NCBI RefSeq assembly: GCF_006345805.1
Contig: NC_043004.1
Coordinates: forward strand, 49,972,001 to 50,036,000
Length of the DNA: 64,000 bases
Direction: 5' to 3'
Source of the DNA: Octopus sinensis
Taxonomy: Eukaryota
In this document: piece after piece, positions 2,698-49,314 of the stretch
Numbering within the stretch: the first letter of the stretch is position 1
Layout of the letters: every line of letters starts with the position of its first letter
Translations under genes and position numbers: made by a program
The notes under the pieces: model-generated
Seen by the model: the letters and a program-made list of their open reading frames with translations, nothing else
The model's database searches: none
What the model was told of the DNA's origin: nothing

Positions 2698-3029
2698 TTA
2701 AGTAGAAACTTGCTTCGACTGGTATTTATTTCGTAAAGTCTTCTTCAGATTGTTCCAGAATGCAGTTTGAAGATGAGTGCCCTCTGAGTCTGATGGCCAT
2801 TGTAGGTAGGTGACTGTTTCCAAAATGAATTTTAGATTTTTATCTTTGATGTCTAAATCCTTGAAATTACCGAGAATAACAGGAATAATTCTGTGACGAA
2901 GTTTGAACATTTCCTGTTGGGCTACTTGGTATTCCATCCGGGTCCACTCGCTGTCTATATAATCATTGGTTAGCACCAGAAGCGTTCTTCTGCTGTTTTG
3001 TATGCTTTCTATGATATTGTTTGAAATAG
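2698..3029 (-). CDS. Gene A coding exon 4 (TIR domain C-terminal half and stop)
   Basis: Acceptor catttacag| at 3030/3029. In frame with exon 3: (T)ISNNIIESIQNSRRTLLVLTNDYIDSEWTRMEYQVAQQEMFKLRHRIIPVILG...VTYLQWP...FWNNLKKTL, TAA at 2698-2700. Typical TLR-type TIR C-terminus. Confidence 0.93.
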
Positions 3030-5072: not shown

Positions 5073-5216
5073 TCTCACCCGGGACGAAGTCCCGAAAGTG
5101 AACGCATGCTTTCAATCCCATGTCATCTTCGATTTTCGGAAACAAAATATTTTTCACCCAATTTTCGTCTGCATCTGAAGATTTGTACGAAATAAATACG
5201 TCGTATAACTTCTCCT
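5073..5216 (-). CDS. Gene A coding exon 3 (TIR domain N-terminal half)
   Basis: Acceptor ttttccattttcag| at 5217/5216 and donor GAGA|gtaagt at 5073/5072. 144 nt, phase 1-1. EEKLYDVFISYKSSDADENWVKNILFPKIEDDMGLKACVHFRDFVPGE contains TIR box 1 (YDVFISY) and the BB loop (RDFVPG). Confidence 0.93.
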
Positions 5217-7935: not shown

Positions 7936-8103
7936 CTTTGTCTACGTAAGGCTGAAAATAGTGTGCAAACTTCATAAAGAATCGAAACCGTCTCTTCCAC
8001 ATCAGGCACATTACGAGTGAAATTAAGACAATCACAGTAACTGCTGTAACAGTTAAAATAATATCTATTGGGAATAATTTCTTCTTGTTTCCATCAGGAC
8101 CGC
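7936..8103 (-). CDS. Gene A coding exon 2 (transmembrane helix and juxtamembrane region)
   Basis: Acceptor ttcttaattacag| at 8104/8103 and donor AAAG|gtaagt at 7936/7935. 168 nt, phase 1-1. Translates (G)GPDGNKKKLFPIDIILTVTAVTVIVLISLVMCLMWKRRFRFFMKFAHYFQPYVDK: 22-aa hydrophobic helix followed by KRR. Not in the ORF track. Confidence 0.9.
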
Positions 8104-9788: not shown

Positions 9789-9820
<32 letters not shown>

Positions 9821-12069: not shown

Positions 12070-12325
<256 letters not shown>

Positions 12326-14810: not shown

Positions 14811-14989
14811 TTGAAAACGAAAAGCAAACAAAACAAAACAAAAACAGTTAAACAAAGCAGAAGGTCAAACAATTCCCCAGAGAATTAATAGAAAGGCAGA
14901 GAAAAGGAAAACACTCCTGAATAAAATTGCAATTGATGTATTTATGTAGGTTGCATGTATGTATCTTTGTGTGTGTCTGTGTGTGTGTG

Positions 14990-15029
<40 letters not shown>

Positions 15030-15577: not shown

Positions 15578-15661
<84 letters not shown>

Positions 15662-17204
15662 CTGCTAGGTTCGGTTGTTCTACATTGATATGGGACAAAT
15701 ACCCTGAAACTAGTCTGCAGATGCCTGACCAGCAAGGGGAAGCGGCTGACCTCCCCTGTTCGAAGGGTGTAATGGACACAGGTTCGTGTGTCACATAGCT
15801 AGCTAGAGGCGATGGCCTCTTGGAGCTATTCAACAGCAGCATTTGTCCTATATTTCTGGGCTGCCATATTAGCTTGGCGATAACTACTAATATATATACA
15901 TACATACACACTGTGTGATAAAATATAAAAATAAAGAACATTATAATTATAAATATGATTTAAAATTTTGGCACAAGGCCTGGAATTTCGGGTGAGGGAT
16001 TAAGTCGATTATATCAACCCCAGTATTCAACTGGTACTTAGTTTATCAACCCCGAAAGGTGTGAAAGGCAAAGCGGACTCGAAACACAAAGACCGACGAA
16101 ATGTTACTAAGCATTGAGCGCAGCGTGCTAACAATTCTGCGAACTTGCCGCCTCAGTAACAAGTTCAATAGCTGATAGGACATTACAAAAGACAAATTAA
16201 AAAAGAGTATTGAGATGAGGAGAAGTCCATAAAAACAGATATGAGATCAGGTATACTCTTTTACTTGTTTCAGTCATTTGACTGCGGCCATGCTGGAGCA
16301 CCGCCTTCAGACGAGCAAATCGACCCCGGGACTTATTCTTTGTAAGCCCAGTACTTATTCTATCGGTCTCTTTTGCCGAACCGCTAAGTGACGGGGACGT
16401 AAACACACCAGCATCGGTTGTCAAGCAATGCTAGAGGGACAAACACAGACACACAAACATATACATACACATACATACATATATATACATATATACGACA
16501 GGTATGATAAAAAATATTATAAAAACAAATTAAATGAAACATTCCAATATGCGGACAGATGCTTGACGTTAAAATCAGAATCTCGCAAGTCCTGGCAAAC
16601 GTTAAGATGGGGAAAAACTTAAATAAATAAAAATCGCTGATACCATGATATATAAAGAGATATAAAGAGATGAGAGAGTTAAAGCAGACTAGGAAATACC
16701 ATAGAATTGATGAACTATACAGTACAACTCGCACAAATGAAAGAAAAGATTAGGAAAAATATTAAAGACACTAATTAATATTAATATTTAAAACAGAGCT
16801 AAAGGCGATAGGTAATAATACTCTAATTGTTGTAGTAATTAGCTGTGGTTATGATAGTGTAATATTCTCAAATGTATGCAAATCGAATTTGAAAGAACAA
16901 TCAGAAAAACGAGTAAAATAACAATTGTATTGAGAATACACCACTCAAAACCCAACACAGAACGATTACATCACTAATACAGGATCTTCTGCAATTGGAA
17001 AACGATAATAAAATATAGGAGTGGCTGTGTGGTAAGTAGCTTGCTAACCAACCACATGGTTCCGGGTTCAGTCCCACTGCGTGGCATCTTGGGCAAGTGT
17101 CTTCTGCTATAGCCCCGGGCCGACCAATACATTGTGAGTGGATTTGGTAGACGGAAACTGAAAGAAGCCTGTCGTATATATGTATATATATGTATATATG
17201 TGTA

Positions 17205-17252
<48 letters not shown>

Positions 17253-17479
17253 TCCCCCTAGCATTGCTTGACAACCGATGCTGGTGTGTTTACGTCCCCG
17301 TAACTTAGCGGTTCGGCAAAAGAGACCGATAGAATAAGTACTGGGCTTACAAAGAATAAGTCCCGGGGTCGATTTGCTCGACTGAAGGCGGTGCTCCAGC
17401 ATGGCCGCAGTCAACTGACTGAAACAAGTAAAAGAGTAAAAGAGAGAGTAAAGAGTATACCGTAGAAGTTCAAAGCATA

Positions 17480-17722
17480 TTGGGTTGGTGCATAATTATT
17501 GAGGCTTTTTTTTAAAACAAATTTTATTCAACAAAAACAATAACAACAACATGTAACAAAAACATCGTTAGATGATTATTCCGGAGCATATTCACCATCT
17601 ACTTCAATTACTGCTTCCCATTTGCTTGGCAGGCGGTCAGACCGTCATTTAAAGATGTTTTTGTTAAATATTGTTATTATTTTTGTTGAATAAAAAGTCG
17701 CAATAATTATGCACCAATCCAA
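17480..17722. mobile_element. Mariner-derived MITE
   Basis: TIRs ttgggttggtgcataattattg / caataattatgcaccaatccaa with TA target-site duplication (TSD). The empty site is visible in the paralogous intron near 42465. Confidence 0.85.
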
Positions 17723-18191
17723 TATATAGAGGAAAGTGAAACTTACAAATAGCTGCATTATCACAACGAAAAACTGTTGTCTTTGTTCTGGGAAGCCAAA
17801 AAATATAATTTAGAAATTAAGATAACAGAGAACAGTTACGAAGGTGGAGAAACAACAGAAATTATCAACATCTGAAAACGGCGTCGAAAATCGGTTAACA
17901 GGATGTTAAGACGATTACAAGATAAAATCCTCCATAAGCAAAATCATACAAGACTAAATAAAGCAGAAGTATCGACTGAAAGGCAAAATATTAAAACTGA
18001 AAACTAATGGATTACTTATTGACACAAGACCAAAACTTCCCATCTGAACAACCAGGATCATATGATGGTTTCTAATTTTGGCAAACAGCCAACTTTTCTC
18101 GAGGAAGGGTAAGTCGGTTAGATCGACCCTAACGTTCAACTAATACATATAGTTGCCATTTGCGTATATACGTATACATATGCATATGTAA

Positions 18192-18272
<81 letters not shown>

Positions 18273-18794
18273 TATGATATATATATACCTGAATAGATAT
18301 ATGAATATATATGAATATATATATATATATGTATATTAATATATATATACATGAGAGAAAGAGAGAGAGAGATGCGTGTATATAATATTTACGTACACAC
18401 GCGCACACACATACACACACACGTATATATACCTACGTGTGTGTGTGTGTACAAAGATATAGAAAATATCGCGATCATAAAATTTGTACAATTTGGCTAA
18501 TTTAACAGCGTATATATCCGACCGCCTTTTCCTAACTATTATACTGTCCACACCATGACTCCGTTCTAAACCATTTATCCGTAGAAAGTTTTTGTAATTA
18601 TAACCTTAATTGAACCACTTTTGCTCTTAGACATGGCGCTTCATTATTCCTTTTTGACATGTTTTCTCTTAATTTGACTGATAACATAAAAATACTACCC
18701 TACCCCTTAAATGGTATAGAAAGAATTTTCTCTTAAGTTCACACACATTTGTTTCCTCGCTCTATCAACCAACCAAGTTTGGTATGTACGAGCA

Positions 18795-19105
18795 ATCCGT
18801 CGGTTACGACGTCGAGGGTCCCAGCTCAACGGAACAGCCTGCTCGGGAAATTAACGTGCAAGTGGCTGAGAATTCCACAGACACGCGTACCCCTAACGTG
18901 GTTCTCAGGGAGATTCAGCATGACATAGAGTGTGACGAGGCTGGCCCTTCGAAATGTAGGTACTATTCATTTTTGCCAGCTGAGTGGACTGGAGCAGCGT
19001 GAAATAAAGTGTCTTGCTCAAGGACACAACGCGTCGCCGGGAATCGAACTCACGACCTTACAATCGTGAGCCGAAAGCCCTAACCACTAAGCCACGCGCC
19101 TTCAC
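18795..19105 (-). mobile_element. tRNA-derived SINE family D (partial head also at 59165-59310+)
   Basis: gtggcttagtggtt...gagttcgattccc head; 11-bp direct repeat tttggtatgta at 18778-18788 and 19128-19138. Confidence 0.85.
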
Positions 19106-19495
19106 AAGTAAAGAGATAGGGCAGAAATTTTGGTATGTAATAATATATTATATGATATAATATATTCCTCTGTAGGTTTCAACTCTGTCATGCATTTAAC
19201 TCTATAATGTATTCGTTTACGTAACGATTATCGTACAACTTTGTCGTGTTTGTTAAGGAAAAACAAGCTTAAGTAATTTACGTTGTTGTAATAAAAACAC
19301 TTAAGCAAACTCTCCTGTTTCATTCTACTCCTGTGTGGTAAGGAGCTTGCTTCTCAACCACCACATGGCTCCAGATTCAGTCCTACTGCATGGCACCTTG
19401 GGAAAATGTCTTCTTATATGGCCTCGGGCTGACCAAAGCCTTGTGAGTAGATTTGGTAGACGAAAACCGAAAGGAGCCCATCGTATATGTATATA

Positions 19496-19538
<43 letters not shown>

Positions 19539-19616
19539 TAAGGGTAGAAATTGATATTTATCAATTAGGACCAGTGGTCTAGCATATTCAAAAAGAATCC
19601 GAAGATTAAAATATTT

Positions 19617-19827
19617 ATATATACCAATTAAGAACTGAACACGAAAAGTGGACAGTCAACATGCTAGATATAGACGTCAAATCGCCATTCACCACAAAAG
19701 ATTATGTTCTCAGATCAAACTGAGTTTGATCTGAGAACATAATCTTTTGTGGTGAATGGCGATTTGACGTCTATATCTAGCATGTTGACTGTCCACTTTT
19801 CGTGTTCAGTCCTTAATTGGTATATAT
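19617..19827. repeat. Near-perfect palindrome, about 100-bp arms with a 3-nt spacer
   Basis: 19621-19720 is the reverse complement of 19724-19823 with one mismatch; spacer tga. Confidence 0.95.
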
Positions 19828-20062
19828 ATATATAATATATAGATATATATATATTATATATATATATATATAGGGAGAGTTTACGAAAAAAACCCAAAAA
19901 AGACGAAGACAGGTGGTGTACAAAACAAACAGGTGTATTAGTATAACGCTCAGGAATAGAAAAAGTCTTTTACGTTTCGAGCCTACGCTCTTCTACGAAA
20001 GGGACACAGAAAAAAACAAGGAGAGAAAAATTGTGTAGTGGCTAACGATCTATCATGGCGAC

Positions 20063-20112
<50 letters not shown>

Positions 20113-20163
20113 ATAATGTGTATGTATATATATATAATGTATATATATATATAATATATTATA

Positions 20164-20218
<55 letters not shown>

Positions 20219-21326
20219 GTATGTATGTATATTTTATGTGTCTCTGTCTCTGTTTCTGTGTTTGTCCCCGCATCATCGCTTGACAACCGATGTTAATGTG
20301 TTTACGTCTCCCGGAACTTAGTGTTTCGGCAAAAGTGACCGATAGAATAAGTACTAAGCTTTACAAAGGATAAGTCCTGGGGTCGATTTCTTCAACTAAA
20401 GCCCTTTAAGGCGGTGTCCCAGCATGGTTGCAGCCAAATGACTGAAACAAGTAAAAGACTAAAAGAACAGATATATGCACGCGCACACACAGGCACACAC
20501 ATGTAAAGAGAGAGAGAAGGGAGCAGAGAGAGAGGAAGAGAGAGAGAGAGAGAGAAAAGATAGAGAGAGGAACAGAGAGGGAGAGAGGAAAAGAGAGAGA
20601 TGGGACAGAAAGATAAGACATATAAAGAAATAGGACAGAAAGGGAGAGGGATAGAGAGAGAAGGGAGAGGGAAAGGGAGAGAGAGGACAGAAAGATTGGA
20701 CATGTAAAGAGATAGGACAGAAAGAGAGAGTGAAAGGGAGAAATAGGGAGAAGATGTAGAGAGAGAGAGAGAGAGAGAGAAACACAGGTATATCAAATAT
20801 CATGTAGCATAAATTCTTGATACGTCTAGGGAGACTCATTACGCCAGTATAAATAACACACACATTTATGATTTGTGAATTGGTCAAATATCCGATTGCT
20901 TTGTTTTTGTTTGTTATTGAAAAGGTTGCAAGTAGCAACGAAATAACTTTAACAAACAAAAGCAAAACAATCGGTTATTTAACCAACTAACTACTAGTAA
21001 TAAATGAGTGGAATTGAAACAGTGTTAATTAAATTGGCATAGTGATTCTCTCTAGACACAATAAAATTTGTTTCAACACACGAATTCACATAAAGAATCT
21101 TGCAAGTCAGATACAAAAACGAAATATGTTCTTGATTTATTCAAATTATCTATCTCTAGAGGATGTGTCACAATTATCAAATGGCAACTGAGACCAGGTC
21201 CATATGAGAAGGGGAGATAGTTGACATACCATATGACTTAACAGCTAAGGTTTTCAAATACACACGTACAAATACAAATACAAATACACACACACAAATA
21301 TATACATACATACATACATACATACA

Positions 21327-21404
<78 letters not shown>

Positions 21405-21457
21405 CATATATACATTCATAATCTTACAATTGTTGTAAGTGGGGCAAAATGACTCAC

Positions 21458-22598
21458 CTTTGTATTGTTCTGTGCAGTTCGAAGAAGGCGTAAAATTGCC
21501 TGGACACTCGCAATATTCTTCATATCGTAACAAAATACAATTGCCAATTGTGCAGTTCCTGTGACAAGGCTCAGTGCATAGATCTCCTGTCCACTGTGGT
21601 TTGCAACTACAGTACATATCTCCGTCATTCCCAAGCACACATATACCATTGGCACATAGATCACACATGTACTGTTCTCCGTCACTTAACTTACGGCACT
21701 GCAAACTATTGTTGTATTTCACACACGTTTCATCGCTTCCACAATGAGTCGAATTCACGGTACAGATTTTGGGTGAAACAGTTGGAGATTCAGAGGTCCC
21801 GTTGTTGTTGGTGGTGTTGTTGCTGTTGTTGTTGTTGTCGTCAGTGTTGTTATTGTTGACCATACGGCATTTGTATATTCTACCATTACCTTCACGAATG
21901 CACTTTTTACCGTTTTTACATGCTTTCCACAGCGGGTGGCAGGTCGCCGCTTTAACAATCAAATCCACTGTTTTGTTAAAGGTTATGATTTTGGGGTTGA
22001 AGCTTCCGTCGTTGTGGTTACTCTCATTTCTGTTGTTGTTGCTGCTGTCATTGATGATGCTGACGGTAGTGCTCTTGTTCGTGTTGTCATTCTTGCTGCT
22101 GTTGCTGCTGTTGTTGTTGTTGATGATGATGATACCATTGGAGTTATTACTGTAGCTTTCGTTGTTGTCAGTGATGCTGATGTTGCTGCTGCTAGTGTTG
22201 CTGTTGTTGATGATGCTAGCATCGATAGCATCGCTGCTGCTATTGCTGTTGGTAATGTTCTTGATGTCGTCAGTATTGTTGTTGGCGATGGTGACGTTCG
22301 TATTCATCTCGTTGTTGTTGCTGTTATTGCCGTCAGTGTTGTTATTGTTGACCAAACGGCATTTGTATATTCTATCATTACTGTCACGAATGCACTTTTT
22401 GCCGTTTTTACACGCATTCCACACCGGGTGGCAGGTCGCCGCTTTAACAATTAAATCCACTGTTTTGTTAAAGGTTATGATTTTGGGGTTGACGTTACTG
22501 ACGATATTTCTTTTGTTGACGATGAAGCTGCTAGTTTCGATATGTATCACACTTGCCATCAATGTGACAATATATAACAGAACAGTTGCTTCCTTCAT
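21458..22598 (-). CDS. EGF-TM-TIR receptor gene A, coding exon 1 (signal peptide, three 4-Cys modules, Asn-rich stalk, two EGF-like domains)
   Basis: ORF MKEATVLLYIVTLMASVIHIETS (signal-peptide-like). EGF-like patterns CDLCANGICVLGNDGDMYCSCKPQWTGDLC and CHRNCTIGNCILLRYEEYCECPGNFTPSSNC. Strong phase-1 donor AAAG|gtgagt at 21458/21457; the rest of the listed ORF is read-through into microsatellite. Confidence 0.9.
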
Positions 22599-22929
22599 AG
22601 TTTCTTTTACAGATATGATGCTACGTTGCTGCGATGTTGCTGGGTCAAGTGTACAACAGAGAATGAAGTGAGATTAACATCAGATCCCGGTGCCAACTTA
22701 TTAATGGAGCACTTCTCAATACAAAAATCACCAGATTACACTGAAAAACACAAAAGATACACGATTCATATTGATGGTGGAGCGGGGTGGTGATGGGATG
22801 GCGGTGTTGGGCTGGCTGACACACACACAGATACACACACACACACACATAAACACATATACTCGCTGCTACATATTGAACAGAAAGGGTACCGAAAGAG
22901 GAGCCTGGGTACAACGGATCAGCTCTTAA

Positions 22930-32419: not shown

Positions 32420-32488
<69 letters not shown>

Positions 32489-32509
32489 TACAGTCAGACA
32501 GACAGACAC

Positions 32510-32577
<68 letters not shown>

Positions 32578-32584
32578 GCAGACG

Positions 32585-32675
<91 letters not shown>

Positions 32676-32910
32676 TAGTAGATACATGCGTGCATATATC
32701 GATGCACTACGTACGCACGCGGGCGCAGTCATACACCCACCACACACGCACACATACAGACCCAGGAGTGGTTGTGTGGTATGAAATTGCTTTCCAACCA
32801 CGTGGTCCCGGATTCAGTCCCACTGCATGGCGATTTTGGTAAGTCTCTTCTGCTATAGACTCGGACCGACCAAAACTTAGTGAGTGGATTTGGTAGACAG
32901 AAACCGTCAT

Positions 32911-32947
<37 letters not shown>

Positions 32948-34473: not shown

Positions 34474-34591
<118 letters not shown>

Positions 34592-35123
34592 TCCTAGTTA
34601 CTCTAGGAATTTCACAAGACATCTCAGATATACATATATATTCTTTTATTGTTATATTTGTTTCAGTTATTTCACTACGGCCGTACTGGAGCACCGCCTT
34701 TTAGTCGAACAAATTGACCGCAGGATTTATTCTTTGTAAGCCTAGTACTTATTCTATCGGTCTGTTTTGCTGAACCTCTAATGTATGGGGACGTAAGCAT
34801 ACCAACATCGGTTGTCAAGCGATGGTGGAGGAACAAATACATACATACGAGCATATACATATACGTGTATATATATAAATATATAAGTATATATATATAT
34901 ATAGTAGGGGATATAATTCCAAACTTACAGGGAAAAATTCAATTTAGCGATTCTAAATCAAATTTCACAATATATAATATATATATATGTAAAATTGAGA
35001 GAAAGACCTCTATTAAACAATTCAATAGTGAAAGACGCTATTCACACCATATAGAAAAAGTGAAATATACTATAGAAAACATTATTCTAAAAATCAATAA
35101 ACTACATAAACGATAAATAGTAA

Positions 35124-37459: not shown

Positions 37460-38168
37460 TGTCTAAGGGTGATTCATGTCGCTTACTCCAGGATCCCTTC
37501 TCTGAACATTTCGGTAGATAATACATTTCTCATCACCTGTCACAATTATGCTTTTAAAAAGCGCGTTTTCATTCCGTTTATAAAGTGAATCACAGATGGA
37601 AATGCGATCTAAAAGTTTCTTCTCATTCAATTCATGTGATACCCAAACATCGTAGCGATTTGTGTACCCAAGCTTTACCAGGTCCTCATGAATGACGGAT
37701 TTTGATAGGTTGAGGCTTTCTGCCAATTCTCGGGTTGTGCAATTTGGGTTATTCTCAGTTAATGACTTGATTTGCTCATCATCTGTAGTGGATGGTCTGT
37801 CTGATCGCTCTTTATCAATAAGGCTACAATCTCCAGCTTGGAACTTCACAAACCACTTCCGTACAGTTCTTTCGGATAAAGACACATCACCGTAAACTGC
37901 GCATATTTCTTTGGTTGCTTGTGAGGTATTTTCCCTTTACGGAAAAAGAAAAGAATCAAGTGCCGAAAATGAACTTTCTTATCTTCCATTTTAAAGGGTT
38001 GCAGAATTAACACAGGTTATAGGAACATAAAACTTCCCCGAAAAGATAGCTTAAACTGTGTTCTAAATGGACGTGTAGTCAAATCCTATTTTATGGACTC
38101 AACCATGTTCTAAAATAAGTCGAAAGGTAAGCTATTATAAATCCGCACGAACTTTCCGGACAACCCAA
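37460..38168 (-). mobile_element. 5' half of a mariner of the same family as 60686-61977
   Basis: TIR at 38140-38168 followed by TA. ORF 37463-37885 is nearly identical to 60873-61235. Confidence 0.9.
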
Positions 38169-38388: not shown

Positions 38389-39125
38389 CAGGGGTTGGAC
38401 AAAATCATAGCATAATAATTTCGAAATATCTATAAAACCGTCAAAAGCTTGTTTATTGGTATACTTTTTTTTATTTTTTTTGGTTTATTATTAATGTTGC
38501 TTAATATGTTTTGCTAAAATTGCTGTTTCTTTTTCAGATACCATCAGAAAAAGGTAATTTTATTCATTAAATTGACAGATCTCTCGGACTTTCAAAGAGG
38601 TCAAATTGTTGGTGCTCGTATGACAGGCGCTAGCGTAACGAAAACTGCCGAAATGCTTAGTGTATCAGAAGTACTATCTCGAAAGTAATGACAGCCTTTG
38701 AGAAAGAGGGGAAAACCTCCTCGTCAAAACAAAACTCTGGGAGAAAACCAAAACTTTCAAATAGAGACCGTCGGACTCTTACACGAATTGTTAGAAAGGA
38801 TCACAAAATTACTGCTCCTAAAATTATTGCAGGGCTTAACGACCACCTCGAGAACCCAGTTTCCACAAAATCTGTTCGCCGGGAGCTGCACAAAGCCTGA
38901 TTTCACTGGAGGGCTGCAATCAGAAAACCACTATTTTCAAAAACAAACATTGCAAAGCGTTTAGAGTGGAGTAAAAACCTACAAAATAGGTCCCTTGAGC
39001 AGTGGAAGAATGTTATTTTCTCGGACGAGTCATCCTTTACCTTATTTCCGACAACCGGCCGATTATACATGTGGGGACAGCCAAAAGAAGCGTTTGACCC
39101 AGGCTGCCTTCTTCCAAATGAAGAG
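38389..39125 (+). mobile_element. Tc1-like transposon 5' fragment
   Basis: TA-caggggttggacaaaat start; DFQRGQIVGAR, SGRKPKLS, VRRELHKA, KNVIFSDESSF. Confidence 0.85.
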
Positions 39126-39217
39126 AAAGCCAGGAAATTTGAGAGATGGAAACAAAAGAAAGAGTGAAAAAACGAAGTAAGTGTGAAGGAGCTGATAGAA
39201 ACAAAGAAAGTCGTACA

Positions 39218-39287
<70 letters not shown>

Positions 39288-40217
39288 GTGTGTGTATGTA
39301 TGTATGTTATGTATGTGTCTATGTGTGTGTGTGTGTACTTACATATAAGATTGCATATAAGAGACCAAATACAAAAAATAGGACAAGAACGCAAAACATC
39401 CACACAGATAATACAAAAAGGGAAACAAGGACGGGTCATTCGGAGTTTTCTTTCCTCAGTCGAGTTCCAGGTTATCTTTGCAATTTCGGCTGGTTATACT
39501 CGAGATTGCTCCAATCTGGCCAGCCCCAAGGAAAAACTAAGCTAAGAGCAGTAGATTCCTTGGAAGAAAGCAGCGAATGTATACGAAAACAAAGCCCTGT
39601 GAGTGGATTTTGTAGACGGAAACTGAAAGAAGCCCTTCGTAAATGTGTATATATATATATATATATATAATATATATATGTGTGTGTGTGGTGTGTGTGT
39701 GTATGGTGGTGTGTCTATGTTTGTCCCCCAACATCGCTTGACAACCATGCTCGTGTGTTTACGTCCCCGTAACTTAGCGGTTCGGCAAAAGAGACCGATA
39801 GAATAAGTACTCGGCTTACAATGAATAAGTCCTGGGGTCGATTTACTCGACTAAAAGGCGGTGCCCCAGCATGGCCACAGTCAAATGACTGAAACAAGTA
39901 AAAGAGTAAACTCTTTTACTTGTTTCAGTCATTTGACTGTAAAGAGTATATATACCTACCTTCATACATACATACATACATACATACATACATGCATATA
40001 TAATACCACTATAATGACCTGCGCCACTATTAATCCCACCACCACTGCCAGCTCACCACCATCAATATGAATAGTGTATCTTTTGTGTTTTTCCGTGTAA
40101 CAGATATTATTTGTGTTGATAAGTGCTCCTCAATAGCTTGGCACCAGGATCATTCTCTGTTGTACACTCGGCCAAACAACATCGCAGCAACATAGCATCA
40201 TATCTGTAGAAGAAACT

Positions 40218-40728
40218 ATGAAGAAAGAAGCTGTACTCTTACTTATTGTCACATTGATGGCATGTCTGATGTATATCAACACTAGCACCGTTAATGTCAA
40301 GAACAACGACAGCAACAACACAACCACGAACAACAACAGCAACAATAACAACATTGAAGATGACGTCGAGAACCACACCAAAAAATGGACGTCTCAACCT
40401 TCGTTTGTTTCACCCAAGATCTGTACCATGAATTCGACTCATTGTGGAAACGGTGAAATGTATGTAATATATAATAGTAGTTTACAGTGCCGTAAGTTAA
40501 GTTACAAAGAACAGTACTTTTGTGACAAGTGTGTCACTGGCTTTTGTGGTTTTGACGAGGACGGATATATGTCATGTTACTCCAAACAACCATGTACAGG
40601 AGAATACTGCTCTGAGCTTTGCCTGAGGGACTGCACAATTGGCAATTGTATTTTTGAAGGAAACAAAGAATATTGCGAATGCCCAGGCAACTTTACATCT
40701 TCTTCGAACTACACAAAACAATATAACG
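40218..40728 (+). CDS. Paralog B coding exon 1 (signal peptide, short Asn stalk, 4-Cys module, two degenerate EGF-like domains); possible pseudogene or decoy
   Basis: MKKEAVLLLIVTLMACLMYINTS...SPKICTMNSTHCG...CTIGNCIFEGNKEYCECPGNFTSSSNYTKQYN aligns with gene A exon 1. Same phase-1 donor position (AACG|gtatgt at 40728/40729). Frame is open but three conserved Cys are substituted. Confidence 0.75.
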
Positions 40729-40788
40729 GTATGTGTCGTTTTCCCCTCTTACAACGATTGTGTGTAAGATTAAGAATGTGTGCGTATG

Positions 40789-40830
<42 letters not shown>

Positions 40831-41449
40831 GTGTGTGATATTGCATGGCAAGTTTGGAAAATTCTTGATCATCTCTCCTTCTAACATGGAGCTGGACTCT
40901 GTTGCCATTTGATGATTGCGACATCCTCTCGAGACAGATAATTTTAATAAACCATGAATCTACGTTGCATGGTGTTTGATATACTTGTGTCCTTCTCTCT
41001 CTTCCTCCCTCCCTCCCCTTCTCTCTCTCTTTCTGTCCTATCTCTTTACATGTGTGCGTCTGTGTGTGTGTCTATGTATATAAGGGAGTTGAATAAAACG
41101 CGAGAGTTTGCTTAAATGTTTCTATTACAACGTGTTTCGCTAGCAAACACCACAACGTTGTACGATAATCGTTACGTAAGAAAATGTATAATAGAGTTGA
41201 AACCAACAGAGGAGTATAGTAATTGAGTTCGATACTATATACCAACTTAAGTTGGTTGACAGAACGAGGAAACAAATGATAAAATTCCTTTTACACCAAT
41301 TAAGTAAAGGGGTGGGGTGGGTAGTATTTTTACGTTATCAAAAGAATTAAGGGAAACGAATAAAAGAGTAATAATGTAGTCTTTATGTCTAAGAGCAAAA
41401 GAGGTTCAATTTAAGGTCATGATTCCAAAAATTGGAATTATGTGTGCAT

Positions 41450-41508
<59 letters not shown>

Positions 41509-41564
41509 TTTGTGTGTGTGTGTGTGTAAATAAAAACATATTTATGTACGTATATATATATATT

Positions 41565-41606
<42 letters not shown>

Positions 41607-43413
41607 TACATACATAAGCATTAGTATATATATGTAATTATATATGTTTATGCATATAAGTATGTATATACCTACATGTATGTATATTGATATGTGTGCG
41701 TATATGCATATGTGTATGTGTGTGTACAAAGATGTCGAAAGTATTATTATTGTTATGGTGGTGATATTCCGCCGAGGTCGACTTTGTCTTTGACTCTTTT
41801 GAGGTCGATAAGGAAGGTACAATTTGAGCACTGGGGTTAACATTATCGAGTAGCCCCTTGCACAAAATTTCCGACCTTGTGCCTATAGGAGAAAGGACTG
41901 TTACGGCGGTGAAATTTCAGACTCGTTTGCCCTCCGGAAAAGTGCTTAGCAGCATTTCATCGAGCTTTACATTTTGTGTTCAGCTTGACCTTTCATCCTT
42001 TCATCGTTGGTTAAGCACCAGTTAAAGATTAGGGTCAACTTTCCGTTCTTCCTAGAAATGTTGGCTTTTTGCCAAAATTTGAAATTATATAATTCTGGCT
42101 GTTCCCGGAGGGAAGCTTTTGGTCTTGTATTAATAAGTAATCTACCAATGTTCAGTCTTAAAATTTAAGTAATTTCGCTTTGCAGCCAGTACATTTTTTA
42201 AAATAAATAACTCTCGCTTCTGCTTTATTTAATCTTGTAAGATATTGCTTATGCAGGGTTTTATCTTGTAATCGTTTTAAAATGACATTCTGTTAACCGA
42301 TTTTCAACTCCGTATTGAAATGTTAACAATTTCTGTTATTTCCCTACCTTCATTATTATTCTCTCTTATCTCAACTCTTAAATTATATTTCTTGACTTCC
42401 TAGAACATAGACAACAGTTTTTCGTTGTGATAATGGCGCTATTTGTCACTGTTTCACTTTCTTCTAGATATGTTTTGAACTTCTACGGTATATATATATC
42501 TATATATATATATATATAATAACAAAGGGTAAAATTACTTAATTAAGAAGTAATCAATAATTTCACCAAGTAGAATTCGGCATAAAAAAGGACCATTTCA
42601 CGGTAAACTTAAGGAATACTTTATAATTAGGGTTCAGCAAAGATTTGTTTTACCACATACCGAAGCTTAGAAATAGCAGCCAAAAAGCCTTAGCTAGTTC
42701 TTCTACTTTAAAAAGGGGACTCCCAGAAAAAACCAAAATACTTGAAAACAATCCACGCAGGCAGAGAGGAAAATTAACGAAAATCAATCTATATCTGGTC
42801 ACTCATGTCCCCTTTTTAAAGTATATATGTATATTAATATTCTTCCAAACCTTATTCTTTCATGTGTGTGTTGTACTGTATAGTTGCATCAATTCTGTGG
42901 TATTTCTTAGTCTGCTTTAATTATCCCATCCCAGTTTCTTTATGTAACATGATATTAGTGATTTTTATTAAAGTTTTTCTTTATCTTCACAGGTGGCAGG
43001 AACTGCGGGATTCTGTTCAACATCAAGCACCAGTCCTTTTATACTGTTTTTATTATGCCTGTCTTAATATCTATTTTAACGAACATCACCCCAACAACAA
43101 CTACTCTTTTGTAATTTGTCTTTCTAATATCCCATCAGCAATTAATTGACTTTGTGGTCAAGGTGGCAAGCTGGCGAGCAGGCAGAATCGTTAGCACGCC
43201 GGACAAAATGTCTAGCGGCTTTCGTACTTCTTTACATTCTGAGTTCAAATGCTGATGCCACCGATGCTGATGTTCACTTTCATCCTGTCGGAGTCGATAA
43301 ATTAAGTCCCAGTTGAACACTGGGGTTCATATAATCTTTTTAATCCCTCCCCCGAAATTGCAAGCCTTGTACCAAAATTTGAAAACAATCATTACTTATT
43401 ATTATTTTATCAC

Positions 43414-43453
<40 letters not shown>

Positions 43454-43460
43454 GATATAT

Positions 43461-43529
<69 letters not shown>

Positions 43530-43541
43530 TATATATAATAT

Positions 43542-43917
43542 AATATAAGAGAGTGGTCACTATATGGCTCACTCTAGCACCAGTTAATCCAAAAGGTTTC
43601 AACCACAAAAATACATGTTCCCATGAAAGTCAGTACGATTGTTAGCTCACACGGACAGGGCAAATAAAAAATATTCATCCAGATAGTTTTGGCTGACGAG
43701 CTACAAGTGGATTTTTTTGTAAGTAAAATTACATTTAATTCATTAATAGCGAAACAATTGTCCCAAAATAATCTGTATTTTTGTTATTTTTTATTTGCCC
43801 TGTCCGTGTGAGCTAACAATCGTACTGACTTTCATGGGAAACATGTATTTTTGTGGTTGAAACCTTTTGGATTAACTGGTGCTAGAGTGAGCCATATAGT
43901 GACCACTCTCTTATATT
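43542..43917. repeat. Inverted repeat, about 132-bp arms, enclosing a hammerhead
   Basis: 43542-43673 versus 43785-43917, one 1-nt indel seen; 111-nt spacer. Confidence 0.95.
43682..43773 (+). ncRNA. Type I hammerhead ribozyme with intact core (Penelope-associated)
   Basis: Stem I gatagttttgg/ccaaaataatc; core CTGACGA 43693-43699; stem II GCTA/TAGC with a long loop; GAAAC 43751-43755; palindromic stem III ACAATTGT; GTC cleavage triplet ending at 43762. Confidence 0.8.
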
Positions 43918-44084
43918 TATTTTGTAAAAATATTATAATATATTATAAAATATTATAATAATCCAGGTTTCTCGGAGCACTAGGCCACTTGGTGTTGAAT
44001 AGATATACTATTAAATTAGTATCTAATTCTCTCACCCTTATTAATTAATTATATATATATATATATATTTATATGTATATACAT

Positions 44085-44136
<52 letters not shown>

Positions 44137-44141
44137 TATAT

Positions 44142-44173
<32 letters not shown>

Positions 44174-44261
44174 TGTATGCATGTATGTATGCATGTACAT
44201 ATATCATCAATTAAAAGAATAAAATTAAGAGTTAATGGTTAATAATTAATTTAACTTATTG

Positions 44262-44369
44262 ATAATCATTCCTACAACTGTTTCAATTAATTCTCAATTA
44301 ATGAATTACAAATTTATTACATAAATTTACATTCATAAGTTATTAGCAAAATATCATCAGGGAAATATT
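44262..44369 (-). ncRNA. Hammerhead-like motif with weak stem II
   Basis: Minus strand: aatatttcc-CTGATGA-tatt...aatt-GAAAC-AGTT-GTA-ggaatgatt. Confidence 0.55.
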
Positions 44370-44579
44370 AGACATTAAATAATTACATGATGAACAATTT
44401 GTTCTTCCAACAAACTAAATATGTGAAATTGCTCTTATTATTTAGTGTATTACTTTGTGTATATGTCCCCCACCCCACCAATATAAGGTATAAAACCAAT
44501 GTAATCTTGGATGTAATCATCCCTTCAAGAGTTATATATTAATAAATATAAATAATAAAGTTTTAATACTAATAAAGTT

Positions 44580-45480
44580 TTAAAGATTCTTTTGAGTTCG
44601 GTCGTTTTTCGAGTTAATTCGCATGTTTCCAATTACCAACTTATACCACCACAGACCCATGCCATTCATGCCACCACAGACACATTAGAATGAATATCTT
44701 TGAACCAAGCAAAAAGGATTTGTACTATAGTTTCTAATACAAGCACCATGGACACACGACTACATGATCTAAAGGATATACTCATTACCAGGAACCACCC
44801 ACCATCACAAATTGATATAGGCTTTCAACATGCCCTATAACTCAACAGCCACGAACTTAGGCATCCAAAATCAAAGAAGGATTTACAACCAAAAGCCCTA
44901 CCATACATCACACAACTCTCTTAACAATGAAGCCTTCGACGCTCCAGAACATTCCCCTAATAAAAGGGGACCACAGAATGAATTTAATCCTCCAAAAGCA
45001 CACCTTCATAAAGAGAAAAAGATAAACCAAATCTATGAAAAGTCTCCTGACAAAAGCCCAAGTACACTAGACAACAACACTGAAGCCGCCAGTAAAAAAA
45101 TGCGGAAGACTTAACTATATGCGTCAACTTAATTGAGGGATCGGAGTTCTCTTTCAAACAGGGTCAACGTTTCACAGTGAAAAACAGCTTCAGATGTGCT
45201 TCGGAGAACTTAATATATGTATTAACTTGCTTTGGATGTCAAGAGCAATACATGAGCGAAACCAAAAGCAGTCTACGTCAAAGGATGGCTCTACATATTT
45301 CCCAGATCAAGATTCAGTAATACAGAAAAATAGCATTCAGCGAACACATCGACATTTGCACCATTAACAAACAACTCAGCTTCAGAATTTTTCCCCTCTA
45401 TAAATTCAGAGAATATGCAACCTGTAGTTAGCGCATCAGTAAAGAGTCAAATTTTATCACAAAATATAAGCTCCTTTTGA
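44580..45480 (+). mobile_element. Degenerate Penelope-like fragment (RT C-terminus and GIY-YIG)
   Basis: 45165-45260 reads RFTVKNSFRCASENLIYVLTCFGCQEQYMSET. Upstream is HPCHSCHHRHIRMNIF...RNHPPSQID-like thumb sequence. Confidence 0.75.
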
Positions 45481-46537
45481 ATGCGCCCACCACAAATAAC
45501 TTTATTACAAGGGTCTTAGAATAATATCCACGCAAATATATTAAAAACGATATATTCAGAACAGTCACTACCCATGAATTTATTCAGAATAATTCCAATC
45601 ACTACTATTACAACCACAACAGGTCACTTTCATTCAGTGCATTTTTGTAGATCAGGTCATTGTATCCAATGTCAGCATTAGGGTACCGTTGCTTTGTCAA
45701 TCATCATTTGCCTTGACTACCGAGAAAGCAAAATTACTTACAGAGAATTTCATAAATGTTGGTATATTTTAGATTAACACTCGCACGATTTTCATTAAGA
45801 AGAAACAAATCAGATTTTTTGCGTGGACTCCTAATATGCTACAAATCCCTTTTTGTGGTCCGAAAAACGAGGTGGTTTGGTGGAAGCCTCGGAAATTTCA
45901 CCCCCTACACCCATTGATCTTTTTACCATCAATTTTTCGATGTACGTGGGAAAATACGGAGATTAAGAATATGGAAAACACCTTTTTTCAATCTCAAATT
46001 TACCATGAAAAACTGCAAGTAAATTTTTAGATAACACTCGTACGATTTTCACTATGACAAAAAAAAATCGGATTTTTTGCGCGGAATCAGTTACCCTGGC
46101 CTCCTAATATGCTACAAAACCATTTTGTGGTTCGAAAAACGGGCGCCCAAAGTAATGTGCGTGATAGATGGGAGGCGGGAAGAAAGATGAACGATTTACA
46201 ATAAATAAGTGATTTAAAATAAATATATTTTAATTGTTGTGTGAGAAAGTATATATAATATGATTATAAAATGTAGTGTCTTTCAAAAACATCCTAAATT
46301 TGAAAACTATATCTCATATTTAAGAAAAAAAAACATTTTACATTTTTATTTTTGGTGAACGCTGTCACTTTCCCCCTCTCCCTCAAACACATTTTGTCTT
46401 TAACGCTTTTATTAGATGCTGTGAAACTCTTTCCCCTCTCCCTCACACACACTTTTTCTTTACATTTTTTTGTTAGACGCTGTGAAACTCTCTCTCTCCT
46501 CACACACACATACATCAATACACAACTCTCACCCTCA

Positions 46538-47424: not shown

Positions 47425-48930
47425 CTACACCATTATTTGAAACCGTCTCTCATATGTGGCATTTGGTTAATGAGGGAGTTTGATGCCGCTGCCCTGATAT
47501 ATGTTCCCGAGCGTGATGTAGGCTCGTCTGGAACACTTGACAGGAAGAGATCCAGTTTTGTTTTAAAGAGCTGTTGGCCTTTGAAACCCAAGCTGTTGCA
47601 GTATCTGGTCCTGTATTTTGATGACGATGTTGGGATCTTTGGTACTCTGCGGTGGCGCTCTGTTCTGCTGTTTGAGTAACTTTCAATGCCAGAGTTTGGT
47701 ACAAGGACTTCCAGGATTTTCCAGATGTGTATCACTGCATTATTTCCCGCCTTCCTTCTAGGGAGAAGAGTTTTAATTCTTTCAGTCTTTTCCAGTAGCT
47801 GATACATTACATTGAGACGATTTTCTTAGATTGCTTCGAGTTCCACCGTTGAGTATAGTTGTGAGCAGTAGTCCAAGCGGCTGAGGACTCATGTCCTCCA
47901 CAGGACCATGAATGTCTCCCTTTCTCTTGTTTTGAAAGTTTGGAGGATGCATCCAGCTAGCCGTCTGCATTTTATTACCAAATTGGTAATATGCAATTGG
48001 AAAGATGCATCATTACTCATGTCAATGCACAGGTCAGGCACTGATATTGATTCAGGGATTGCAATTCCTCCCGGGTCAGTGTATTCTGTCTGTATGTCGT
48101 TCAGCTTTGCGTGCTAGTAGCGCAGGGCTTGGAATTTTCCTGCATTAAACTGCATGTTGTTGTCTTCAACCTACCTGTATATTGCGTCCAACTCCCGTTA
48201 CAGATGTGCAATATTTCCAGGATTTTGTATTGTCTGAGAGACTTTTGTGTCATCTGCATTGCAAGCAAGGGTGGGTATATGCGCAACTGAGGGCATGCCT
48301 GAGAGGGCCACTATGAATAGCAGTAGCCCTAAGACAGTGCCCCGTGGAACACCACTTGTTATTTGCGTTTCCTTGAAGGTGGCTCCATTGGCCACCACTG
48401 CCTGACGTCTATCTTTTCGAAAGTTGTGCAGCCACTCTCCATGTTTTCCACCTATGCAGAGATCACGCAGCTTGTGACATATATCATGGTCGACTTTATC
48501 AAAGGCTTTTTGCAAAGTCGAGACATCACAACCACACTTGAGCCATTTAGCAGTTGTTTTAACACCCAGTCCCAGTGTTGCAAGAGCTATGTTAGACAGC
48601 TCCTACCTGGTCGAAATCCATTCTCGTTGTCAGCCAGCAAGTCGTTTTCTTCTAGGAACGCGATTAATTTATTCCATGACTTTGCTGATTTGTGAGGTCA
48701 GAAAGATTGGCCTATAATTTTTAGCATCTGCTCTGCTTCCTCCCTTATGGATAGAGCATATTATCCCTTCTTTCAGGCTGTCTGAAAGCTTACCATTTTT
48801 AGAATGCCCAGAAAAATTACTTACACATATAAAGGTATGTTGGAATAGGTCATTTTCAACCAGATATCGATAGTGAGACAATTTTTCCAGATCCACGTTA
48901 TTTGAAAGGTATTGGAAATATCTGTCTTGA
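47425..48930 (-). mobile_element. 5'-truncated CR1/L2-group LINE
   Basis: HKGGSRADAKNYRPIFLTSQISKVME, QKAFDKVDH, TSGVPRGTVLGLLLF, NADDTKV, DLFLSSVPDEP; frameshifted. Confidence 0.88.
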
Positions 48931-49242
48931 AAATGTCACTTCTATTGGTGTCACAGGCGTCACACCAAATAAAGGACGATGGTGATCACAGTGATAGTTG
49001 TCCTGTAAACACCTTAGCATTATTTTTTTTTATTTCAAGGTTAATATAAATAAACACAATATGGCTTTTTACGTTGCTCTGGAGAAATTCAAAGAAATTA
49101 GTAGTTAATAAAAAAAGATTCTTTATGCGATGTCTCATAAGTCAAACTTCTGGGGTCCTCAACAAACATTTTCAGTTTTAAATAGTTTAATATTTGTATG
49201 TGTACTGTGAAAAGTGAATCGATATCATTCTTGTAAATGTTC

Positions 49243-49314
49243 GAAATTTACAGCTCATATATTTCTGTCTCTCTGATTGAAATTTACAGCTCATATATTT
49301 CTGTCTCTCTGATT
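49243..49314 (+). repeat. Perfect 36-bp tandem duplication
   Basis: gaaatttacagctcatatatttctgtctctctgatt twice. Confidence 0.95.

What the first reader, a model, noticed from the sequence alone, without database searches (positions are those of the whole stretch)
40040..43385. Head-to-head paralog from an inverted duplication: Cys-depleted and apparently lacking TM/TIR exons (decoy or pseudogene)
Seen: plus-strand 40040-40217 matches the reverse complement of 22599-22800, exon 1 is paralogous, and intron blocks match collinearly (40840-41050 vs about 20700-21240; 41085-41350 vs 18640-19330; 42020-42470 vs 17720-18140; 42840-43385 vs 15950-16770). Copy B keeps an open frame and its donor but has TCV->MYV, CSC->CYS and NCT->NYT, plus W->C in EGF1. 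I found no TM- or TIR-like exon in 43400-64000. Inference: either a decaying pseudogene, a gene whose remaining exons lie beyond the window, or a secreted ectodomain-only decoy paired with the receptor, by analogy to IL-1R2 and soluble TLR decoys.
Basis: partly seen in the sequence, partly recalled or inferred. Interest (0 to 1): 0.7.

Follow-up and report, generated by a model that had tools for sequence, protein, structure and literature searches.

The report
Truncated TIR-less octopus receptor paralogue
Next to an octopus immune-type receptor gene (EGF-like outside, TIR signalling domain inside) lies an inverted partial copy that is a real, already annotated two-exon gene encoding only the outer part plus a short greasy tail; it is a modestly interesting case of a possible "decoy" born by partial duplication, not a new kind of system.

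Summary
Window 40033-43412 (+) is collinear with the reverse complement of 22799-15952, exon 1 is paralogous (61% aa), and the three Cys losses and W->C are real. No TM or TIR exon lies in 43400-64000.

Copy B (Octopus sinensis XP_029639642.1, misnamed) is a complete 210-aa gene: exon 1 at 40218-40728 and exon 2 at 42993-43114. Exon 2 comes from sequence homologous to gene A's intron 1 and adds a 39-aa hydrophobic tail.

The duplication was partial, so B never carried TM/TIR exons. A syntenic O. bimaculoides orthologue has the same splice junctions and stop, and keeps all 16 Cys. There are no frameshifting indels in the coding sequence where about 6 are expected.

So B is neither a gene running off the window nor an old pseudogene. 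However, the O. sinensis copy lost as many Cys as unconstrained substitution predicts (3 versus 2.96). Its dN/dS is about 0.6-0.7 and not clearly below 1. A mosaic phylogenetic signal at 40391-40665 indicates gene conversion among paralogues.

A decoy or co-receptor function is only inferred. Recent relaxation in O. sinensis remains a live rival.

The parts
40033..40217 (+). Gene B 5' module (promoter-proximal region and 5'UTR). It is the inverted copy of A 22799-22599, with an 18-bp deletion relative to A and C.
   Evidence: BLASTN. The five-way alignment shows this ~190 bp plus the signal-peptide codons are the best conserved part among paralogues A, B and C.
40218..40728 (+). Gene B exon 1: signal peptide, Asn-rich N-glycosylated linker, a 4-Cys module and two EGF-like modules (170 codons plus 1 nt, phase 1). 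The donor is GTATGT.
   Evidence: 100% identical to P0001 / XP_029639642.1. AF2 gives pLDDT 70-88 over residues ~65-150, and the top Foldseek hits are Notch and EGF-ligand EGF modules, though E >= 0.009.
40391..40665 (+). Tract within exon 1 with a discordant phylogenetic signal (a gene-conversion mosaic).
   Evidence: Site patterns A=B_bim|B_sin=C versus B_sin=B_bim|A=C are 9:2 inside the tract and 3:33 outside. Max-chi-square permutation p = 0.0002. The protein tree groups (A,B_bim)|(B_sin,C) with 93/92 support.
40729..42992 (+). Gene B intron 1. It carries blocks collinear with the 5' part of A's intron 1, interspersed with microsatellites.
   Evidence: Orthologous intron in O. bimaculoides locus L001 10503-12624.
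42993..43114 (+). Gene B exon 2 (terminal). Acceptor ...TTCACAG|G. It encodes GRNCGILFNIKHQSFYTVFIMPVLISILTNITPTTTTLL followed by TAA.
   Evidence: spliced ORF equals P0001. The same junction and stop occur in O. bimaculoides. Kyte-Doolittle 19-residue mean is 1.65. AF2 predicts a helix at 186-200 at low pLDDT.
43115..43412 (+). 3' flank of B, still homologous to A's intron 1. It marks the end of the duplicated segment, and an (AT)n repeat follows.
   Evidence: First AATAAA is at 43663.
21458..22598 (-). Gene A exon 1 (381 codons). It holds an internal tandem duplication of the 4-Cys module, an Asn/Ser-rich region, a third 4-Cys module and two EGF-like modules.
   Evidence: Identical to P0004 and P0016.
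22599..22799 (-). Gene A 5' module, the source or partner of B 40033-40217.
15952..21457 (-). The 5' part of A's intron 1 that was co-duplicated. It includes the non-coding counterpart of B exon 2 at about 16600-16160, interrupted by a SINE at 16251-16495.
   Evidence: At the position of B's acceptor, A has AACGT|T rather than CACAG|G, plus 2-nt and 17-nt indels and the SINE.
7936..8103 (-). Gene A transmembrane exon. It is not duplicated in B.
   Evidence: Present in NCBI isoform X1, P0016. No TBLASTN hit elsewhere in the window.
5073..5216 (-). Gene A TIR exon, N-terminal half. Not duplicated in B.
2698..3029 (-). Gene A TIR exon, C-terminal half plus stop. Not duplicated in B.
   Evidence: Pfam TIR PF01582 E = 5.9e-21 over residues 503-652 of my 656-aa model.

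Best explanation
Copy B is a real two-exon gene of Octopus sinensis (chromosome CM016866.1, about 50.0 Mb; RefSeq XP_029639642.1, misnamed 'basic-leucine zipper transcription factor J' because of its Asn-rich linker). It is a truncated, TIR-less paralogue of the neighbouring EGF-TM-TIR receptor gene A.

Shown: an inverted partial duplication copied about 190 bp of 5' flank/5'UTR, exon 1 and the first part of intron 1. It did not copy the TM and TIR exons. The copy then uses a 122-nt terminal exon made from sequence that is intronic and non-coding in A. The product is signal peptide, glycosylated Asn-rich linker, 4-Cys module, two EGF-like modules and a 39-aa tail with a 15-residue hydrophobic core. 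The gene predates the O. sinensis / O. bimaculoides split and has kept its frame, splice sites and stop in both species. Exon 1 carries a mosaic tract best explained by gene conversion with paralogue A in the O. bimaculoides lineage.

Inferred: the protein enters the secretory pathway and is held at the membrane by a short TM anchor or a GPI signal. It cannot signal through TIR. It therefore acts, if at all, as a competitor or partner (decoy or co-receptor) of the EGF-TIR receptors.

In O. sinensis the disulfide scaffold is eroding: 3 of 16 Cys are lost and one is displaced. This copy is therefore either being remodelled or has recently come under relaxed constraint.
For: The spliced ORF with canonical GT..AG equals P0001 exactly. 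The duplication is collinear and ends at about 43412 / 15952. There are no TM/TIR hits downstream. O. bimaculoides locus L001 is syntenic on both flanks, and its 207-aa product P0002 uses the same junctions and stop and has the same tail.

Indels outside simple repeats run at 13.7 per kb in orthologous intron and intergenic DNA. That predicts 7.3 indels (about 6 frameshifting) in the 536 non-repeat CDS sites, and none is seen (P = 0.0024). The only indel is 9 nt, in frame, in the AAC/AAT repeat. Whole-CDS dN/dS is 0.58, Fisher p = 0.035. The B_bim branch is slower than neutral, with 7 substitutions where 13-17 are expected.

In A, the exon-2 counterpart lacks the AG, is frameshifted and is split by a SINE. 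The hydrophobic core of the tail is conserved, with only V<->I changes, and its KD19 value is 1.65. The 5' module is conserved among A, B and C. The mosaic signal has p = 0.0002, and the A-B_bim distance in the tract (about 0.09) matches the species divergence. A truly dead paralogue, C in O. vulgaris, shows what decay looks like here: a TE fragment and a stop inside exon 1.
Against: No expression data could be examined, and neither P0001 nor P0002 has a Logan (SRA assembly) source. Pfam finds no domain in B.

On the inferred B_sin branch, 20 non-synonymous and 7 synonymous changes give omega of about 0.66, not different from 1 (p = 0.31). The 3 Cys lost equal the neutral expectation of 2.96. 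Exon 2 diverges as fast as intron (13/122 versus 0.082 per site; omega 0.69), so only its ORF and hydrophobicity argue for constraint.

For the O. sinensis branch alone, an open frame is only moderately unlikely under neutrality (about 0.012 jointly). The tail's hydrophobicity is borderline for a TM helix, compared with 2.83 for A's TM. Decoy or co-receptor activity is pure inference.
Confidence: 0.6

Rival explanations
1. The O. sinensis copy is a young, not yet disabled pseudogene. The B gene was functional in the common ancestor and still is in O. bimaculoides. In the O. sinensis lineage constraint has lapsed, so the EGF scaffold is drifting and the ORF is open only because little time has passed.
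For: Cys losses match unconstrained simulation (3 observed, 2.96 expected). Branch omega is about 0.66 and not significantly below 1. There are 28 lineage-assigned substitutions against 7 in B_bim, while introns are symmetric at 39:41. There is no Pfam hit, and the C-x-C of EGF1 is destroyed. NCT->NYT lies outside the conversion tract, so it is a genuine O. sinensis-lineage loss. No B-like protein is annotated in O. vulgaris, although A and C are. Paralogue C shows that this family does decay.
Against: There is no stop or frameshift, and both splice sites, the start and the stop are intact. The joint probability of that over the whole branch under neutrality is about 0.012. Part of the apparent acceleration is probably an artefact of A-to-B conversion in O. 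bimaculoides. RefSeq models it as protein-coding.
Confidence: 0.28
2. Exon 2 is an annotation artefact. The locus is transcribed, if at all, as exon 1 with read-through or other 3' ends, and the 'tail' has no biological meaning.
For: Exon 2 evolves at the intron rate with omega 0.69. The tail has low AF2 confidence. Short exon-1-like models with unrelated tails exist in other species' predictions, P0020 and P0023.
Against: The same acceptor, phase and stop are present and were predicted independently in O. bimaculoides. Both have a polypyrimidine tract plus AG, and A's homologous site lacks them. The hydrophobic core changes only V<->I.
Confidence: 0.08
3. B is a full-length receptor gene whose TM and TIR exons lie to the right of the window.
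For: A's intron 1 is more than 13 kb, so long introns occur in this family. The region right of 64000 was not examined.
Against: The gene closes with an in-frame stop at 43114 in both species. Homology to A ends at about 43412. 20.6 kb downstream holds only TE remnants and no TM/TIR similarity. No other gene is called within 10 kb of B in either species' locus.
Confidence: 0.03

Closest known systems
Molluscan EGF-TIR proteins (a class named in Crassostrea gigas, PMC4346834, and Aplysia californica, PMC9334734). In this window it is gene A (XP_036361280.1) and elsewhere on the chromosome paralogue C (XP_029640222.2, named 'toll-like receptor 4').
   Same: B's signal peptide, 4-Cys module and two EGF-like modules are direct paralogues of A's (61% aa, 79% nt). 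The conserved 5' module is shared with A and C. A's TIR domain is 46-50% identical to bivalve family members.
   Different: B has no TIR domain and no homologue of the family's TM exon. Its C-terminus is a lineage-specific exon derived from intron sequence. Only the three Octopus clusters match the ectodomain strongly among 1.84 billion representatives.
Signalling-dead receptor paralogues such as IL-1R2, RP105/CD180 and soluble TLR5 of fish (from my own knowledge, not tested here).
   Same: The ectodomain is homologous to that of a TIR-signalling receptor and the TIR domain is absent. It is encoded by a separate gene next to or related to the receptor gene.
   Different: No ligand, binding, expression or inhibitory activity is known for B. 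The ectodomain is EGF-like, not Ig or LRR. In O. sinensis the disulfide scaffold is partly lost, which is unusual for a working decoy.
Partial gene duplicates that gain a new terminal exon from formerly intronic sequence (a general mechanism of new-gene origin, from established knowledge).
   Same: The duplication breakpoint lies inside intron 1. The new 3' exon lies in sequence that is intronic and non-coding in the parent.
   Different: The direction cannot be proven. An ancestral alternative terminal exon that later decayed in A is not excluded, because C's intron shows no homology.
Paralogue C in Octopus vulgaris (CAI9726519.1, locus L002): a clearly decayed family member.
   Same: It has the same exon-1 architecture and losses at two of the same Cys positions (TCV->TFV, C-x-C->CHY).
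   Different: C_vul has a ~100-bp TE-like insertion and a premature stop inside exon 1. B has neither.

Membership tests
Molluscan EGF-TIR receptor class | Intracellular TIR domain | tested here: not met
   Pfam finds TIR in A (E = 5.9e-21) and nothing in B. There is no TIR-like TBLASTN hit anywhere in the window except A's own exons.
Molluscan EGF-TIR receptor class | Transmembrane segment homologous to the family's TM/juxtamembrane exon (..W[KR]RR[FV]..MK..YFQPY..) | tested here: not met
   TBLASTN with A's TM exon finds no second copy. B's tail is unrelated in sequence and only borderline hydrophobic.
Molluscan EGF-TIR receptor class | Signal peptide plus an EGF-like ectodomain homologous to family members | tested here: met
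   61% identity to A over 114 aa, E = 1e-37. Profile hits to the A and C clusters at E = 4e-51 and 2e-53.
EGF-like domain | Six conserved Cys per module, with C-x-C-x5-G-x2-C (PROSITE EGF_1 pattern, recalled from memory) | tested here: not met
   In B_sin, EGF1 reads SCYSKQPCTGEYC: the C-x-C is lost and a Cys is displaced four residues. EGF2 has lost its sixth Cys (NYT). A and B_bim have CSCKPQWTGDLC and CYCKPQWTGEYC, which fit the pattern.
EGF-like domain | Significant profile or fold match to EGF modules | tested here: inconclusive
   No Pfam EGF hit for B_sin, and EGF_Teneurin at E = 0.06 for B_bim. The AF2 core has pLDDT 70-88. All top Foldseek hits are Notch or EGF-ligand EGF modules, but the best E is 0.0086.
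Decoy receptor (IL-1R2 type) | Ectodomain paralogous to a signalling receptor, with the signalling domain absent | tested here: met
Decoy receptor (IL-1R2 type) | Expressed, binds the receptor's ligand or the receptor itself, and dampens signalling | not testable with these tools
   No transcript, ligand or assay data are available. Accession searches of the literature found nothing.
Unprocessed pseudogene | Disabling lesion: premature stop, frameshift, or lost start or splice site | tested here: not met
   Intact 210-codon ORF with canonical GT..AG. Zero frameshifting indels against about 6 expected.
Unprocessed pseudogene | Neutral evolution (dN/dS about 1, structural residues not protected) | tested here: inconclusive
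   Whole-CDS omega is 0.58 (p = 0.035 versus 1). The B_sin branch omega is about 0.66 (p = 0.31), and Cys loss equals the neutral expectation. Polarisation is confounded by gene conversion.

The most novel reading that the evidence does not exclude
B is a functional, membrane-tethered, TIR-less partner of the octopus EGF-TIR receptors. On this reading it is a cephalopod-specific decoy or co-receptor created by partial inverted duplication plus exonisation of intron sequence. It is periodically re-homogenised with the receptor's ligand-binding region by gene conversion. In O. sinensis its disulfide pattern is being adaptively rewired: the EGF1 Cys is displaced, and two other Cys are lost, which leaves two former disulfide partners unpaired and free for a new pairing.
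Probability: 0.15. Interest if true: 0.55.

Novelty: new member of a known kind. Interest (0 to 1): 0.35.

Why it matters
EGF-TIR proteins are a mollusc-wide but functionally uncharacterised branch of TIR immunity. A naturally occurring TIR-less paralogue sitting next to its parent offers a convenient handle for asking what the EGF ectodomain binds and whether signalling is regulated by competition.

The locus is also a clean worked example of how a partial duplication becomes a closed gene (intron to terminal exon). It shows how gene conversion can make one orthologue look accelerated. Practically, three RefSeq names in this family are artefacts of Asn-rich low complexity and should not be propagated: bZIP factor J, Ser/Thr kinase DDB_G0272254 and eat-20.

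If the O. sinensis copy is merely drifting, the finding is an ordinary young pseudogene-in-the-making.

Tried and rejected
1. I searched for TM/TIR exons of B. TBLASTN of A's exons against the whole window at E <= 10 with word size 2 found nothing. Sensitive BLASTN of 43000-64000 against 1-17000 found only SINE/TE matches beyond 43387.

2. Gene conversion from C into B_sin, as the cause of B_sin's unique changes, is rejected. The C-B_sin distance in the tract (10-12 per 60 nt) is not reduced, and only 3 of 14 B_sin-specific residues match C. The A-B_bim distance is the reduced one.

3. I first used three-way-alignable intron blocks as the neutral yardstick (0.06). This underestimates divergence, so I replaced it with full orthologous intron and intergenic HSPs (0.077-0.097).

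4. I tried to obtain the O. bimaculoides gene A and the O. vulgaris gene B. P0003 is not on record. The loci L001 and L003 have no called genes in the flanks to walk from. No B-like O. vulgaris protein was found. The conversion donor is therefore inferred, not observed.

5. Pfam on B gave nothing. Literature searches by accession gave nothing. A search for 'ecTIR-DC'/EGF found only general EGF-TIR mentions.

6. A PDB search by fold gave only weak EGF matches.
Full report
**Origin of the window.** The window is Octopus sinensis chromosome CM016866.1, at about 50.0 Mb. The 210-aa product of copy B is 100% identical to RefSeq XP_029639642.1, and the gene span of 2,897 bp equals window 40218-43114.

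**1. Check of the observation.**
- BLASTN of 39000-46000 against 1-30000 gives a single collinear inverted chain from B 40033 to 43148 onto A 22799 to 16160. One more block, 43277-43387, matches 16067-15956. Identities are 76-88% and E-values go down to 1e-65.
- The other matches in the region are copies of a dispersed SINE, with at least 8 copies in the window.
- Exon 1 of B (40218-40728) is open and ends at a GT donor. Its last 114 codons are 61% identical to A exon 1.
- The substitutions TCV->MYV, C-S-C->C-Y-S, NCT->NYT and W->C are all present.
- No TM- or TIR-like sequence exists in 43400-64000. That stretch holds reverse-transcriptase and Mos1/mariner remnants.

**2. Gene A.**
- Gene A lies on the minus strand and has canonical splice sites.
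- Its exons are exon 1 at 22598-21458, a TM exon at 8103-7936, and two TIR exons at 5216-5073 and 3029-2698. A possible extra exon lies at 10564-10379.
- Pfam TIR scores E = 5.9e-21.
- RefSeq lists isoforms of 594, 538 and 511 aa under misleading names.
- Relatives with 46-50% identical TIR regions occur in bivalves.
- The EGF-TIR class is recognised in oyster and Aplysia (PMC4346834, PMC9334734).

**3. Gene B.**
The sequence 42993-43114 follows a polypyrimidine tract and AG, and it is in phase with exon 1.
- It encodes 39 residues (GRNCGILFNIKHQSFYTVFIMPVLISILTNITPTTTTLL) and a TAA stop. The spliced ORF equals XP_029639642.1 exactly.
- This exon lies inside the duplicated block. Its counterpart in A's intron 1 (about 16600-16160) has AACGT where B has CACAG, carries 2-nt and 17-nt indels, and is split by a SINE at 16251-16495.
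- So the duplication was partial. It covered about 190 bp of 5' flank/5'UTR, exon 1 and the first part of intron 1.
- B closed its reading frame with sequence that is intronic in the parent. I could not decide whether that exon is new or an old alternative exon that decayed in A. The only outgroup intron available, paralogue C in O. vulgaris, shows no homology.
- The tail has a 15-residue hydrophobic core. The Kyte-Doolittle 19-residue mean is 1.65, just above the classical 1.6 threshold and well below the 2.83 of A's TM segment.
- AlphaFold2 predicts a helix at residues 186-200 at low confidence. It models residues ~65-150 at pLDDT 70-88.
- The best PDB fold matches are all EGF modules (Notch1, epiregulin, epigen), but the best E-value is 0.0086.

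**4. Conservation.**
- O. bimaculoides locus L001 (CM046608.1) is syntenic with the window on both sides of B. L001 1-6004 aligns with window 29912-34533, 9835-13045 with 40037-43412, and 16417-19418 with 48796-51035.
- Its 207-aa product (XP_014777861.1) has the same donor, acceptor, phase and stop, and the same tail. It keeps all 16 Cys.
- Orthologous intron and intergenic DNA differs by 0.077-0.097 substitutions per site. Outside simple repeats it differs by 13.7 indels per kb.
- The CDS has 536 non-repeat sites, which predicts 7.3 indels, about 6 of them frameshifting. None is seen (P = 0.0024).
- The single indel is 9 nt, in frame, in the AAC/AAT repeat.
- Whole-CDS dN/dS is 0.58 (Fisher p = 0.035).
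- The gene has therefore been kept open since before the species split. This rules out an old pseudogene and a gene that continues off the window.
- A third paralogue, C, lies elsewhere on the same chromosome. It is intact in O. sinensis (374 aa with TM and TIR). In O. vulgaris it is clearly dead, with a TE-like insertion and a stop inside exon 1.

**5. State of the O. sinensis copy.**
- I polarised changes with A. The EGF-coding 342 nt have 28 changes assigned to B_sin and 7 to B_bim (p = 0.0005). Three-way-alignable intron sites are symmetric at 39:41.
- The B_sin changes are 20 non-synonymous and 7 synonymous. That gives omega of about 0.66, not different from 1.
- A simulation of 28 unconstrained substitutions predicts 2.96 lost Cys, and 3 are lost.
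- Taken alone, this looks like lapsed constraint.

**6. Gene conversion confounds the polarisation.**
- A protein tree groups (A, B_bim) against (B_sin, C) with 93/92 support, which contradicts synteny.
- Nucleotide site patterns, using C_vul as a fourth taxon, support (A=B_bim | B_sin=C) 9:2 within 40391-40665. Outside the tract they support (B_sin=B_bim | A=C) 33:3. The max-chi-square permutation p is 0.0002.
- In that tract the A_sin-B_bim distance (about 0.09) equals the species divergence, while C-B_sin is not reduced.
- The simplest reading is conversion of B by A in the O. bimaculoides lineage.
- If so, many 'B_sin-specific' changes, including TCV->MYV and the EGF1 rearrangement, may date from any time since the duplication. 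They may simply have been erased in B_bim.
- NCT->NYT (40709-40711) lies outside the tract and is a true O. sinensis-lineage loss.

**7. Mechanism.**
- Shown: B has the family's conserved 5' module, a signal peptide, an ectodomain paralogous to the receptor's, no TIR, and a hydrophobic C-terminus.
- Inferred: B is exported and tethered by a TM anchor or GPI signal, is unable to signal, and acts as a competitor or partner of A or C.
- For O. sinensis alone, an open frame across the whole branch under neutrality has a probability of about 0.012. That falls short of excluding a recent loss of constraint.
- I put about 0.6 on 'conserved truncated gene, function plausibly modulatory' and about 0.28 on 'recently relaxed, drifting copy in O. 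sinensis'. Small weights go to an exon-2 annotation artefact and to distal exons.

**8. Novelty.**
- The gene is already in RefSeq, misnamed and uncharacterised.
- TIR-less receptor paralogues and partial duplicates with exonised intron sequence are both known kinds.
- A profile search of 1.84 billion representative proteins finds the ectodomain strongly only in the three Octopus clusters, and finds the tail nowhere else. B is therefore a lineage-restricted new member, not a new category.

Noticed in passing
window 40033-40290 versus 22799-22520; L002 9814-10083: The ~190 bp upstream of the ATG plus the signal-peptide codons are far better conserved among paralogues A, B and C than the ectodomain coding sequence. 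A versus C shows 0-2 differences per 60 nt, although the two genes lie about 6.5 Mb apart in O. vulgaris. B carries an 18-bp deletion here. This suggests a constrained promoter/5'UTR element, or recurrent conversion of the 5' end.
   Followed up: partly
window 21458-22598 (-): Gene A exon 1 contains an internal tandem duplication of a 52-residue unit (NPKIITFNKTVDLIVKAATCHP.W.ACKNGKKCIR...YKCR.VNNNNTD). The two copies are separated by about 110 residues of Asn/Ser-rich low complexity. B and C lack this. The Asn-rich stretches explain the spurious RefSeq names (Dictyostelium-like kinase, bZIP factor J).
   Followed up: partly
window 7936-8103 (-) and P0004: RefSeq isoform X2 of gene A (538 aa) skips the TM exon in frame. 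It joins the signal-peptide-bearing ectodomain directly to the TIR domain, which is an odd topology if it is real.
   Followed up: no
window 10379-10564 (-): An open, phase-compatible candidate exon with AG/GT borders in A's intron encodes ..ENRRGYSTSSSRMADHLNPFPE. This is homologous to a segment of O. bimaculoides paralogue C (P0003: ENRRGYSTSSSRIARHLHPFP). It is absent from all three RefSeq isoforms of A.
   Followed up: partly
L002 10373-10495 (O. vulgaris OX597821.1, about 17.92 Mb): Paralogue C of O. vulgaris is a pseudogene. A ~100-bp TE-like fragment and a stop interrupt exon 1, and two Cys are lost at the same positions as in B_sin. The O. sinensis orthologue (XP_029640222.2, 374 aa) is intact but has a shortened second EGF module and NST instead of NCT.
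   Followed up: partly
window 5526-5791, 16254-16496, 17017-17443, 20189-20463, 34642-34885, 39654-39910, 50815-51221, 62615-62749: At least eight copies of one SINE-like element (80-96% identical) are present. Three of them sit in A's intron 1, and one sits immediately upstream of B's 5' module.
   Followed up: no
window 37466-37936 (-), 60864-61232 (+), 48201-48602 (-), 54599-56820 (-): These are transposon remnants. Two are Mos1/mariner transposase N-terminal fragments (HTH_48, E = 4e-11 and 4e-20). One is a reverse-transcriptase fragment (RVT_1, E = 3e-4). The longest ORF set in the window (413 + 177 + 166 aa) has no confident Pfam match.
   Followed up: partly
window 40218-40728 versus L001 10001-10502: Synonymous divergence of B between the two species (dS about 0.18-0.21) is about twice the substitution divergence of the adjacent intron and intergenic DNA (0.077-0.097). 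Gene conversion explains part of this. Higher exon mutability (for example at CpG) was not examined.
   Followed up: no
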